Shown: in pieces, positions 13,331 through 15,045 of the stretch
Numbering within the stretch: position 1 is the first letter of the stretch
Layout: each line of letters starts with the position of its first letter
Notes under the pieces: generated by a model
What the model was told of the DNA's origin: nothing
Seen by the model: only the letters and a program-made list of their open reading frames with translations
The model's database searches: none
Source: Octopus bimaculoides
Taxonomy: Eukaryota
Assembly: GCF_001194135.2 (NCBI RefSeq)
Contig: NC_068985.1
Span: 50,721,180-50,785,179 of the forward strand
Direction of reading: 5' to 3'
Length of the DNA: 64,000 bases
Program-made: the position numbers and the translations under genes

Positions 13331-13336
13331 TTTATT
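13331..13336 (-). promoter_or_regulatory. Candidate polyadenylation signal of the coiled-coil gene
   Basis: AATAAA on the minus strand about 45 nt downstream of the TAA stop. The DNA is AT-rich, so chance occurrence is possible. Confidence 0.55.
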
Positions 13337-13381
13337 AGCAATGTTATGAAAAGAATTTATCAAGACTTAAAATTGATACTA

Positions 13382-14971
13382 TTAGCTCTTCCTACTTTTC
13401 GCCTCTTCAACGATCTTCATGGATCTCGATTTAGCCTCTGCATGTGAAATATATTTCTCGTTTTGGGCCTCCGTCAATTCAAAGGCTAAATTCTCATCTT
13501 GTGCACCCATGTAATCCAACGGAAATTTCATTTCAACTACCTCTTCTACGTCACCAACCTCTATCTCGGAAGCTAAGGTATCGCTAATTGGCTTAGGCCG
13601 CAATTCTTCGATGATTTCTTCAAGTTTTTCTTTTACCTCAATTAGAGTTTGGCCCTTTAATTCACCCTGAAATACTGTTGCAACATGGTCACAAAGGTCT
13701 TTCTTCACACTTTCATATTGGTTAAGTAGTTCCTTTATTTGCAAACTCTGTTTGTGTACGCTGAAATGACGTTCTTTGCCCATTAGGTACATATTCCTGA
13801 CTTCATAAATCCAGTCATTCATTTTATCTAATTCCTGTGTTCTTTTAATCTCAGCGGCTTCCAAATTTCCTTTGATGTGACGAATTTCTTCTTTTTTGCA
13901 AATGAGAGTTTCAAGAGCCTGATTTATAGCAGCCATTAACTGCTCTTTAGCAGTATTTTCCCAGTTAATTCTTGGGGGTAAATCATCTAACTTTTTAATA
14001 TCAAGCTCTGTTTTGATTGCTTCATTCATGTCTTTAAGTTTAATAAATTTAACCTCTGTGTCTTCTAGTTCCTTTTTTATAGATATCATTCGATTTTCTT
14101 TCAATTCTCGTTCGGCCTCATTTATACCCATATCTTTATTAGATTTTTCTGTCTTCAATTTTTTATTCTTCATTTTTTTCTCTTCCAAATTAGACTCTTG
14201 AGTTTGTTTACCAACGATTAGAAGACGTTTTGTATTTTCTAATTCCGTTTGCGCTTTTAAACATCTTTTGACTTCATTTTCATATAAAATCGATAGCTCT
14301 CCTAGTTCCTTTTTCGCCTCAGCTAAACCCTTTTCACTCAATTCTAGCTCATGAGGAATATTAACTAATTCTTTCTTCATTTGATTGACCAAGTATTTAT
14401 AAGTAGCGACAGTGTTACATGCCATCTCCCATTTGAAGTTTACTTTGTTGTAGCTATTGTATATCGTACGAAGCCGCTGAAGCAAATTGTCTTCAAAAGT
14501 ACTTTGCTTTTGTTTAACGTCTTCAAAAAAGCATATTTTTTTATTGCAATCTTCCATACTATCCTCTTTCTTTTTGGTCACATATTGTGTCAAATTTAAA
14601 TTCCTGAGATTATGGCACAACTTATCTAAACTTTTTTCTACAGTTTCTTGAAGAGTATGTTGTCGCCTCTGTGTCATTTCACCATTATCTCCGACAGGTG
14701 AAGTATCTTGAACATCTTTGTACAAAGATTTCACCAATTCTTCTCGCTTGAGGAGGTTTTCTTCCACTAATTTTGCCATGACAACATTATTTTCTTTGAT
14801 TAAATTATCGAGATACTCCAAAACAGATTTAGCTTCTCTTTCGTTTAATTCAATTCTTGATTTAATATCTTTTAATAAATCAGGTAGTGTTCGTGCCATT
14901 TTCGTGTACTTCCCATAGTTTGGCTTTCGAATCCAAAAGTCAATTTTGGCTTTGTCTGAAAAGTTACTCAT
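13382..14971 (-). CDS. Uncharacterised 529-aa coiled-coil protein, single coding exon
   Basis: 1590 nt open frame in AT-rich DNA. First ATG at 14971 in context TCAACAATG; the ORF track's TTG start at 15076 adds a hydrophobic, intron-like leader. K/E/L-rich with heptad-like runs (LSEKGLAEAKKELGELSILYENEVKRCLKAQTELENTKRLL). No transposon or enzyme motif seen. Confidence 0.85.
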   Translation of the reverse strand: MSNFSDKAKIDFWIRKPNYGKYTKMARTLPDLLKDIKSRIELNEREAKSVLEYLDNLIKENNVVMAKLVEENLLKREELVKSLYKDVQDTSPVGDNGEMTQRRQHTLQETVEKSLDKLCHNLRNLNLTQYVTKKKEDSMEDCNKKICFFEDVKQKQSTFEDNLLQRLRTIYNSYNKVNFKWEMACNTVATYKYLVNQMKKELVNIPHELELSEKGLAEAKKELGELSILYENEVKRCLKAQTELENTKRLLIVGKQTQESNLEEKKMKNKKLKTEKSNKDMGINEAERELKENRMISIKKELEDTEVKFIKLKDMNEAIKTELDIKKLDDLPPRINWENTAKEQLMAAINQALETLICKKEEIRHIKGNLEAAEIKRTQELDKMNDWIYEVRNMYLMGKERHFSVHKQSLQIKELLNQYESVKKDLCDHVATVFQGELKGQTLIEVKEKLEEIIEELRPKPISDTLASEIEVGDVEEVVEMKFPLDYMGAQDENLAFELTEAQNEKYISHAEAKSRSMKIVEEAKSRKS

Positions 14972-14996
14972 TGTTGATATTTTGACAGAATTTGAT

Positions 14997-15045
14997 CTAA
15001 GTATCAAAAGATATTGAAAATATATACAATACAAAACAGAAATGA
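14997..15045 (-). promoter_or_regulatory. Candidate 3' splice site upstream of the ATG, implying a non-coding 5' exon
   Basis: The minus strand has a T-rich tract ending TTTTGATACTTAG, with the AG at 14998-14997, 25 nt before the ATG. The donor was not identified. Confidence 0.45.

What the first reader, a model, noticed from the sequence alone, without database searches (positions are those of the whole stretch)
13331..15045. Orphan 529-aa intronless coiled-coil gene in a transposon-rich region
Seen: 1590 uninterrupted coding nt in AT-rich DNA where every recognisable TE frame is broken; ATG context TCAACAATG; candidate acceptor 25 nt upstream; AATAAA about 45 nt after the stop; K/E/L-rich heptad-like runs over most of its length, with short non-coiled N- and C-termini. 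I recognise no family. Inference: a functional lineage-restricted gene, a retrogene or a domesticated element, possibly a structural or germline protein. This is the strongest lead in the window.
Basis: partly seen in the sequence, partly recalled or inferred. Interest (0 to 1): 0.72.

Follow-up and report, generated by a model that had tools for sequence, protein, structure and literature searches.

The report
Intronless octopus ODAD3-like coiled-coil gene
The 529-codon open frame is a real, expressed and conserved single-exon octopus gene. It is not an orphan but a very diverged copy of ODAD3/CCDC151, the coiled-coil protein that anchors outer dynein arms to cilia and sperm tails.

Summary
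Window 13382-14971 (minus strand) is a 529-codon ORF plus stop, far longer than chance allows, with the stated ATG context and an AATAAA 45 nt after the stop.

RNA contigs from at least four octopus species run collinear with the genome over about 13315-15360 without any splice. The proposed acceptor upstream of the ATG is neither used nor conserved. The locus is single-copy and has no transposon domains or termini.

Orthologues exist in O. sinensis and O. vulgaris (91% identity) and Argonauta hians (71%). All gene calls read (O. sinensis, Argonauta, one Logan contig) are intronless. pN/pS is 0.30-0.46 within Octopus, and dN/dS is about 0.14 against Argonauta.

"No family" is wrong. An exhaustive HMMER search, a profile-profile comparison (98.4%, E 8e-15), shuffle controls (89 bits against -19±5) and an end-to-end collinear alignment place it in the ODAD3/CCDC151 (DC1) family. 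CCDC183 is a further relative. ODAD3-like genes of Tubulanus and Lingula have about 12 coding blocks, so an old retroposition is likely.

Expression is very high in one RNA library and absent from two sister libraries. I infer testis but could not decode the tissue. Whether octopus also keeps a canonical ODAD3 was not testable.

Verdict: a new, mis-annotated ("kinesin heavy chain-like") member of a known family, of moderate-to-low interest.

The parts
13385..14971 (-). Coding sequence of 529 aa: a single-exon, ODAD3/CCDC151-like coiled-coil protein. The most constrained core is about aa 101-280.
   Evidence: ORF and translation. Orthologues at 91% and 71% identity. dN/dS. Homology to ODAD3.
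13382..13384 (-). TAA stop codon.
   Evidence: The C-terminus (...VEEAKSRK-x*) is conserved in all four octopod sequences.
13315..13381 (-). 3' UTR of about 67 nt.
   Evidence: RNA contigs of the sister species end at 13314 (X2) and 13316 (X6).
13331..13336 (-). AATAAA polyadenylation signal, 45 nt after the stop and about 15-20 nt before the RNA 3' ends.
14972..15360 (-). Unspliced 5' leader, up to about 389 nt, carrying nine short uORF-starting ATGs. Contig 5' ends lie at about 15272, 15322 and 15360 in different species.
   Evidence: No joints were reported in any run across this stretch.
15338..15354 (-). 17-nt block TTTAAATGACGACGCTA, identical in three Octopus species and Argonauta. It is a candidate core-promoter or leader element (TATA-like TTTAAAT plus a TGACG half-site, and it also contains the first uATG).
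   Evidence: Its function is inferred only.
13315..15360 (-). Whole transcription unit as supported by RNA contigs: about 2.05 kb, collinear with the genome, no intron.
   Evidence: X6 contig of 2046 nt spans 13316-15360. X2 spans 13314-15085. X1 spans 13424-15202 plus 15173-15264. X11 spans 13388-15322.

Best explanation
This is a bona fide protein-coding gene of octopods. [quoted passage not shown]

Shown here: the gene is single-exon, single-copy, transcribed as a roughly 2 kb unspliced polyadenylated mRNA, conserved from Octopus to Argonauta, and under purifying selection that is strongest in the ODAD3-homologous core.

Inferred:
1. It arose by retroposition of an ODAD3-like mRNA before the Octopus-Argonauta split. 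The whole CDS is collinear with ODAD3, and the relatives read here are multi-exon.
2. It is a tissue-specific paralogue, most likely of testis and sperm, by analogy with CCDC63 and CCDC183 in mammals and the sperm-specific docking paralogues of Drosophila.
3. It works as ODAD3 does. It would form a heterodimeric coiled coil with an ODAD1/CCDC63-like partner that lies along the A-tubule of axonemal doublets and positions outer dynein arms.

My confidence by step: real functional gene about 0.95; ODAD3-family membership about 0.85; retroposed origin about 0.6; sperm/testis docking role about 0.45.
For: Gene reality:
- ORF far beyond chance.
- Collinear high-depth RNA contigs in organisms A, B, D and G, with low-depth fragments in organism C, and no joints.
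- polyA signal and matching 3' ends.
- DNA depth of 10-16, flat across the locus, against 1e2-1e6 in flanking repeats.

Conservation and selection:
- Intronless orthologues in O. sinensis, Argonauta and a Logan contig; a further copy in the same 90% cluster is annotated in O. vulgaris.
- Synteny of ±10 kb with O. sinensis.
- dN/dS of 0.13-0.15 against Argonauta.
- pN/pS of 0.30-0.46 within Octopus, Fisher p from 1e-3 to 1e-9, and 0.18-0.22 for aa 101-280.

Family:
- The exhaustive phmmer search returns ODAD3-like/CCDC151 proteins and CCDC183 as the only named distant hits.
- The profile built from those hits finds bovine ODAD3 at 3e-81.
- hhalign of the octopod profile against the ODAD3 profile gives 98.4% probability and E 8e-15.
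- The ODAD3 profile scores the window protein 89 bits. 1000 composition- or heptad-preserving shuffles gave -19±5 (maximum -3.9), and the reversed sequence gave -23.5.
- BLASTP is collinear over aa 28-486 with Tubulanus ODAD3-like.
- The 14-sequence alignment is end-to-end collinear, including the core motif (RLRxxxNSxxK...AxN...Y...P...EL..L) and the C-terminal basic tail.
- The only PDB sequence hit of the single protein below E 0.1 is a docking-complex DC1.

Retroposition: Tubulanus and Lingula relatives spread about 12 coding blocks over 9.8 and 6.3 kb.

Tissue restriction: depth of 1389 in run X1 and 0 in two sister runs of the same study. The 2015 O. bimaculoides set comprises 12 tissues including one testes library (PMC6408891).

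Precedents: CCDC63 replaces ODAD1 in mammalian sperm (PMC11779644). Drosophila sperm and chordotonal cilia use different docking paralogues (PMC6367277). CCDC183 is testis-specific (PMC10629680).
Against: - The tissue of the expressing libraries could not be decoded, so 'testis' is analogy rather than data.
- Identity to ODAD3 proteins is only about 20-23%. The NJ tree puts the octopod clade on a long branch outside ODAD3+CCDC183 without resolving its origin.
- Pfam gives no hit. This is weak evidence, because bona fide amphioxus and Ciona CCDC151 also fail Pfam.
- Structure search is uninformative.
- No parent gene was identified and no poly(A) or TSD relic is visible. Intron loss by another route cannot be excluded.
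- I could not show that octopus also has a canonical ODAD3, so 'paralogue' is unproven.
- pN/pS near 1 in the C-terminal third for one species pair shows that part of the protein is only weakly constrained.
Confidence: 0.6

Rival explanations
1. Retrogene replacement. This intronless gene is the only ODAD3 orthologue of octopods. The multi-exon parent was lost, and this gene serves as the general docking-complex subunit in all motile cilia and sperm.
For: No second cephalopod ODAD3-like protein appeared among the ten hits of the exhaustive search. The alignment is full-length collinear with ODAD3. Retrogene replacement has a precedent in amphioxus SYCP1 (PMC5803294, listed).
Against: Only about seven of the many ODAD3 clusters that must exist in the library reached E<=1e-3, so the absence of a cephalopod one says little. 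ODAD3 orthologues of different phyla keep 28-37% identity to each other, while this protein has dropped to about 20%. It evolves fast within octopods: 71% identity Octopus-Argonauta and pN/pS up to 0.46. That is unusual for a sole essential subunit. Expression is all-or-none between libraries.
Confidence: 0.15
2. Neofunctionalised relative. Like vertebrate CCDC183, it keeps the ODAD3 coiled-coil scaffold but no longer docks dynein arms. It would act instead in some other centriole, flagellar-base or cytoskeletal role during spermiogenesis or in another tissue.
For: CCDC183 is among the hits (E 1e-4). It is itself clearly ODAD3-related (1e-29 to amphioxus CCDC151). Yet mouse knockouts keep their dynein arms (PMC10629680). 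The octopod protein shows strong divergence and a weakly constrained C-terminal third.
Against: There is no specific affinity to CCDC183 over ODAD3. The best hits are lophotrochozoan ODAD3-like proteins, and the tree does not group it with CCDC183. The ODAD3 core and C-terminal tail motifs are retained.
Confidence: 0.2
3. A true orphan or unrelated coiled-coil protein. On this reading the similarity to ODAD3 comes only from K/E/L-rich heptad composition.
For: Pfam gives no hit. The PDB hit is marginal at E 0.02. Foldseek finds nothing significant.
Against: Shuffles preserving composition or heptad register, and the reversed sequence, score more than 90 bits lower. Reciprocal profile scores of seven ODAD3/CCDC183 proteins are 20-51 bits against a maximum of 5 for their shuffles. 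hhalign gives 98.4%. Invariant non-heptad positions (N126, K176, A184, Y191, P206, E222) are shared with ODAD3.
Confidence: 0.03
4. A transposon-encoded or domesticated-element ORF. Alternatively, a kinesin heavy chain relative, as the public name suggests.
For: The neighbourhood is repeat-rich. Public records name the orthologues 'kinesin heavy chain-like'.
Against: DNA depth is single-copy, and each genome look-up returned a single contig. No TE or kinesin motor domain is present in Pfam. No terminal repeats flank the gene. The public name is most likely a coiled-coil artefact of automatic annotation.
Confidence: 0.02

Closest known systems
ODAD3 / CCDC151 (Chlamydomonas DC1/ODA3; bovine 7rro chain H4)
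   Same: The two are homologous over essentially the whole length, with similar size (529 aa against about 530-620 aa). Both are all-helical rods with a few breaks. They share a core motif around aa 165-230 and a C-terminal basic tail.
   Different: Identity is only about 20-23%. The octopod gene is intronless, whereas the relatives read here have about 12 coding blocks. It evolves fast, its expression is all-or-none between libraries, and Pfam or PDB recognition from a single sequence fails. Its docking function has not been shown.
CCDC183 (vertebrate testis-specific relative of ODAD3)
   Same: Also a diverged ODAD3-like coiled-coil protein with restricted (testis) expression. It is detected as a distant hit.
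   Different: There is no specific grouping with it. CCDC183 has no orthologue in Drosophila according to PMC10629680, and dynein arms persist in the mouse knockout. The octopod gene is an independent, lineage-specific derivative.
CCDC63 (sperm paralogue of ODAD1) and the sperm versus chordotonal docking paralogues of Drosophila
   Same: They set the same evolutionary pattern that I propose here: a cell-type-specific paralogue of a docking-complex coiled-coil subunit (PMC11779644; PMC6367277).
   Different: Those are DC2/ODAD1-side paralogues. This gene is on the DC1/ODAD3 side. In mammalian sperm CCDC151 itself is retained and pairs with CCDC63.
Distal DC1 (PDB 9e78 and 9y6s)
   Same: It is the only PDB sequence hit of the single protein below E 0.1 (E 0.019, aa 105-276). 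From my own knowledge, not checked here, this chain comes from kinetoplastid flagella, which carry separate proximal and distal docking complexes. That would be another case of lineage-specific duplicated DC1 proteins.
   Different: The similarity is marginal and the lineage is unrelated. It is not evidence of orthology.

Membership tests
ODAD3/CCDC151 (DC1) family | Statistically significant sequence or profile similarity to bona fide ODAD3 orthologues, beyond coiled-coil composition. | tested here: met
   phmmer gives 1.7e-8 to 7.5e-4 against ODAD3-like/CCDC151 proteins. The profile of those hits finds bovine ODAD3 at 3e-81. hhalign gives 98.4% and 8e-15. The window protein scores 89 bits against -19±5 for 1000 shuffles.
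ODAD3/CCDC151 (DC1) family | Collinear full-length architecture with the conserved central motif and the C-terminal basic tail. | tested here: met
   BLASTP aligns aa 28-486 with 6-477 of Tubulanus ODAD3-like. The 14-sequence alignment has invariant N126, K176, A184, Y191, P206, E222, L223 and L226, and an aligned C-terminal tail.
ODAD3/CCDC151 (DC1) family | Recognition by the curated Pfam model of the docking-complex coiled coil (PF21773 ODAD1_CC). | tested here: inconclusive
   No hit for the octopod proteins. The model also misses bona fide amphioxus CCDC151, Ciona ODAD3-like and Latimeria CCDC183. It hits only two nemertean proteins, so it is not a usable criterion for the ODAD3 side.
ODAD3/CCDC151 (DC1) family | One-to-one orthology with ODAD3, as opposed to being an extra paralogue. 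| tested here: inconclusive
   The NJ tree puts the octopod clade plus the L004 protein (100% bootstrap) on a long branch outside ODAD3+CCDC183.
ODAD3/CCDC151 (DC1) family | Heterodimer with ODAD1/CCDC63 on the doublet microtubule, required for outer-arm attachment. | not testable with these tools
   Needs proteomics, localisation, cryo-ET or a knock-down.
ODAD3/CCDC151 (DC1) family | Expression in cells that build motile cilia or flagella. | tested here: inconclusive
   Very high in one library and zero in two others of the same study. It is also expressed in sister species. Tissue labels are coded.
Processed retrogene | Intronless CDS collinear with the full CDS of a multi-exon family. | tested here: met
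   The gene is single-exon in three octopod genomes and in RNA. Relatives have about 12 coding blocks.
Processed retrogene | Identified parent gene, poly(A) relic and target-site duplications. | tested here: not met
   No A-tract follows the 3' end. The only flanking direct repeat is a 14-mer lying 230 nt and 1020 nt outside the transcript, probably by chance. No parent was found. Erosion is expected at this age, so this lowers proof of retroposition but not its plausibility.
Kinesin heavy chain (the public annotation of the orthologues) | N-terminal kinesin motor domain. | tested here: not met
   No Pfam domain of any kind passes threshold in the four octopod proteins.
Transposable-element ORF | Multiple copies, TE protein domains and terminal repeats. 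| tested here: not met
   DNA depth of 10-16, equal to unique flanks. No TE domains. No LTR or TIR around the gene.

The most novel reading that the evidence does not exclude
[quoted passage not shown] In the mammalian sperm structures read here only the ODAD1 side is swapped (for CCDC63), and CCDC151 is retained. An ODAD3-side swap would be a kind of sperm-axoneme paralogue replacement not described in the papers I read. It would also be a natural experiment on which parts of DC1 are needed for docking.
Probability: 0.35. Interest if true: 0.45.

Novelty: new member of a known kind. Interest (0 to 1): 0.3.

Why it matters
The result corrects a misleading public annotation ("kinesin heavy chain-like" or "hypothetical protein"). 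It removes an apparent orphan by assigning it to the outer-dynein-arm docking family.

If the testis-specific reading holds, it adds a lophotrochozoan example to the recurring theme that sperm axonemes recruit lineage-specific paralogues of docking-complex subunits, here apparently made by retroposition.

The sequence comparison also marks the small set of ODAD3 positions that survive extreme divergence. That is useful for interpreting ODAD3 variants. It is not a new kind of system.

Tried and rejected
- Pfam on the window protein and its orthologues gave nothing. This proved uninformative, because true CCDC151 proteins also fail.
- Two further homologous-protein searches used profiles: ODAD3-like set A2 and octopod set plus L004 protein, A3. 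Both were swamped by coiled-coil words and returned only 3 proteins each. The canonical octopus ODAD3 and further cephalopod relatives therefore could not be sought.
- AlphaFold2 gave pLDDT 48 with the 4-sequence alignment and 67 with 14 sequences. Foldseek against PDB gave no match at E<=0.001.
- The NJ tree did not resolve the origin of the gene.
- Retroposition relics were sought. There is no poly(A) tract, and one flanking 14-mer direct repeat (13071 and 16380) was judged to be chance.
- Rfam found nothing in 9000-20000.
- Identifying the organism of L004 (ENA ERZ21867824) failed. SRR11869391 and XP_029636949 are likewise in no paper.
- I tried to follow a 3226-nt RNA contig of organism G upstream of 15580. 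Its upstream 2.5 kb does not align to the window. One read-laying run was lost to a filter.
- The TE-ORF, kinesin and chance-ORF readings were rejected.
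Full report
**1. The observation**

On the minus strand an ATG at 14971 opens a frame that runs to a TAA at 13384-13382. That is 529 codons plus stop, 1590 nt.

The stop-free stretch is 565 codons. One hundred Markov-1 simulations of the window gave a mean longest stretch of 149 and a maximum of 225. With the local frequency of stop trinucleotides (6.4%), 530 open codons have a probability of about 6e-16. All other apparent long ORFs of the window span runs of N.

The ATG context TCAACAATG is as described, and it is conserved in Argonauta. 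AATAAA lies at 13336-13331 (-), 45 nt after the stop.

The protein is 13.6% K, 13.6% E and 11.2% L. It shows more a/d heptad contrast than shuffles (0.370 against 0.271±0.019). AlphaFold2 predicts a series of very long helices at 29-89, 97-276, 286-322 and 328-433.

**2. It is a transcribed, unspliced, single-copy gene**

Run X1 is from the same organism as the window, because DNA runs of that organism hold 100% of the sampled words. In X1 an RNA contig of 1781 nt lies on 13424-15202 with no difference and no gap, at word depth 1389. A second contig reaches about 15264-15272. Two other RNA runs of the same study have depth 0 over the gene.

In a species about 2% diverged, contigs cover 13314-15085 and 13316-15360, the latter being the whole 2046-nt contig. 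In a third species one contig covers 13388-15322. In a fourth the CDS has depth of about 1960. No run showed a joint.

The mRNA is therefore about 13315-15360. It has a 3' UTR of about 67 nt and a leader of up to about 389 nt with nine short uORFs. It has no intron.

Its AG is AA in O. sinensis and is missing in Argonauta.

DNA contig depth is flat at 10-16 across 12334-15339. The flanking repeats reach 1e2 to 1e6. No terminal repeats bracket the gene. No TE or other Pfam domain is present. It is not a transposon ORF.

**3. Conservation and selection**

The protein database holds orthologues of the same length in O. sinensis (91%), an unnamed Logan assembly (91%) and Argonauta hians (71%, 530 aa). 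A further sequence in the same 90%-identity cluster is annotated in O. vulgaris. The window's own protein is already in NCBI, UniRef and EukProt. Public names are "kinesin heavy chain-like" or "hypothetical".

In O. sinensis and Argonauta the gene call is exactly as long as the CDS, so it is intronless. No other gene is called within ±10 kb. The ±10 kb around the gene is collinear with O. sinensis at 78-94% identity. In Argonauta only the CDS plus about 70 nt upstream, and two low-complexity pieces, still align.

dN/dS is 0.13-0.15 against Argonauta, where dS is about 1.2 and so near saturation. Within Octopus pN/pS is 0.30-0.46, significantly below 1 (Fisher p 1.2e-3, 1e-9 and 1.2e-8). It is lowest at aa 101-280 (0.18-0.22) and highest at aa 401-529 (0.39-0.90).

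This is a constrained but fast-evolving protein.

**4. The family**

Pfam and a single-sequence PDB search are nearly silent. The only hint is a docking-complex "distal DC1" chain at E 0.019.

The exhaustive HMMER scan of 1.8 billion cluster representatives found ten proteins at E<=1e-3. They were:
- the octopod cluster itself;
- a 30%-identical protein (P0004, plus P0007 for the N-terminus) from an ENA assembly;
- proteins that their sources name outer dynein arm-docking complex subunit 3-like (Tubulanus, Lineus, Ciona);
- CCDC151 (Branchiostoma);
- CCDC183 (Latimeria);
- a hypothetical protein of the bivalve Solemya velum;
- an unnamed 274-aa metagenome protein (P0008; names).

A profile of the ODAD3-like hits (A2) finds bovine, pig and human ODAD3 at 3e-81 to 4e-68 and Tetrahymena DC1 at 5e-45. 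They are therefore true ODAD3 relatives.

Profile-profile comparison of the octopod alignment with A2 gives 98.4% probability and E 8e-15 over 247 columns.

Coiled coils invite false positives, so I ran controls. The A2 profile scores the window protein 89.0 bits. It scores 500 global shuffles and 500 heptad-register-preserving shuffles at -19±5 (maximum -3.9), and the reversed sequence at -23.5. Reciprocally, the octopod profile scores seven ODAD3/CCDC183 proteins 20-51 bits, against at most 5 for their shuffles.

BLASTP with Tubulanus ODAD3-like is collinear over aa 28-486. A 14-sequence alignment is collinear end to end. Its invariant positions are N126, K176, A184, Y191, P206, E222, L223 and L226. 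The C-terminal "S/T-x-x-[DE]-x-K ... basic tail" also aligns.

The absence of the Pfam ODAD1_CC model carries no weight, because it also misses amphioxus CCDC151, Ciona ODAD3-like and CCDC183.

Foldseek searches of two AlphaFold models (pLDDT 48 and 67) gave nothing significant, as expected for isolated rods.

An NJ tree joins the octopod sequences with the ENA protein (100% bootstrap). It leaves them on a long branch outside ODAD3+CCDC183. Family membership is clear, but the exact origin is not.

**5. Origin**

The Tubulanus and Lingula relatives spread their CDS over about 12 blocks in 9.8 and 6.3 kb. The octopod gene has none of these introns.

The ENA relative is read as two adjacent ORFs in L004, 9550-9948 and 10001-11257. 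They are separated only by a 1-nt frame change, which is probably an assembly error.

A full-length, intron-free copy of a multi-exon family is the signature of retroposition. No poly(A) relic, convincing target-site duplication or parent gene could be shown. The event predates the Octopus-Argonauta split, so this step remains an inference.

**6. Function**

In the solved axonemes that the A2 profile hits, ODAD3 is listed as a docking-complex subunit. The sperm structure paper describes a CCDC63/CCDC151 coiled coil (PMC11779644). From established knowledge of the family, this coiled coil lies on the A-tubule and anchors outer dynein arms.

Paralogue use by cell type is documented:
- CCDC63 replaces ODAD1 in mammalian sperm (PMC11779644).
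- Drosophila sperm and chordotonal cilia use different CCDC63/114 orthologues, and fly CCDC151 is chordotonal-only (PMC6367277).
- Vertebrate CCDC183 is testis-specific and needed for flagellum formation, although dynein arms persist in the knockout (PMC10629680).

The octopus gene combines all-or-none, very high expression among libraries, fast evolution and a retrogene structure. I therefore consider a sperm/testis-specific DC1-type docking subunit the most likely role (about 0.45).

The main rivals are a CCDC183-like diverged role (about 0.2) and replacement of the canonical ODAD3 (about 0.15).

The tissue labels of the runs are coded. The 2015 O. bimaculoides set is known to contain 12 tissues, including one testes and one ova library (PMC6408891). 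That is compatible with a single positive run but does not identify it.

**7. Upstream element**

A 17-nt block, TTTAAATGACGACGCTA (15354-15338, minus strand), is identical in three Octopus species and in Argonauta, amid otherwise barely alignable DNA. It lies at the 5' limit of the longest RNA contig (15360).

It combines a TATA-like motif, a TGACG half-site and the first uATG. It is a candidate promoter or leader element. Its function is untested.

**8. Verdict**

The "orphan" label does not survive sensitive searches.

It is a new, mis-annotated and unusually diverged member of the ODAD3/CCDC151 family, probably a retrogene. Novelty: new member of a known kind. Interest: about 0.3.

The most novel reading not excluded is a sperm-specific replacement of the DC1 subunit in octopods (probability about 0.35, interest about 0.45).

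Noticed in passing
window 15338-15354 (-): A 17-nt block, TTTAAATGACGACGCTA, is 100% identical in the window, O. sinensis, a third Octopus and Argonauta, although the surrounding non-coding DNA of Argonauta barely aligns. It sits at the 5' limit of the longest RNA contig and contains a TATA-like motif, a TGACG half-site and the first upstream ATG.
   Followed up: partly
window 14870-15580 and upstream: In run X20 (organism G) a 3226-nt contig of depth 166, against about 1960 for the CDS, overlaps 14870-15580. It then continues for about 2.5 kb into sequence that does not align to window 15581-18900. This could be a longer 5' form, an upstream exon or a species-specific insertion.
   Followed up: partly
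window 11500-11647 and 11994-12141; 12000-12333: Two 148-nt copies of an extremely high-copy element lie in inverted orientation (84% complementary) just downstream of the gene. Word depth reaches about 3.5 million in a DNA run and about 1e5 in RNA runs, so the element is probably SINE-like.
   Followed up: no
window 12326-12387: A perfect tandem duplication of a 31-nt unit, ATCACACGTCACACTCTAAAATATATCGTTT.
   Followed up: no
window 104-637 (+): A 177-aa ORF with weak retroviral or gag-type aspartyl protease similarity (E 3e-5, below the Pfam cut-off). It is a retroelement fragment.
   Followed up: no
window, 13 N-runs (e.g. 4214-5195, 6909-7541, 38178-39177): The window holds 4993 N in 13 gaps. 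These gaps create the spurious multi-frame 'ORFs' listed by the ORF tool. Many microsatellites flank the gaps.
   Followed up: yes
L004 9550-11257: A 30%-identical, also intronless relative lies on a 121-kb ENA contig of unknown organism. It is split into two called ORFs by a single frame change near codon 75, which is probably an assembly error. A mariner-type transposase fragment lies nearby.
   Followed up: partly
window 7547-7901 and 8462-8680: These are the only stretches outside the gene that still align to the Argonauta locus (74-81%). The second overlaps a (CTT)n array and the first abuts an N-run, so both are probably low-complexity matches rather than conserved elements.
   Followed up: no
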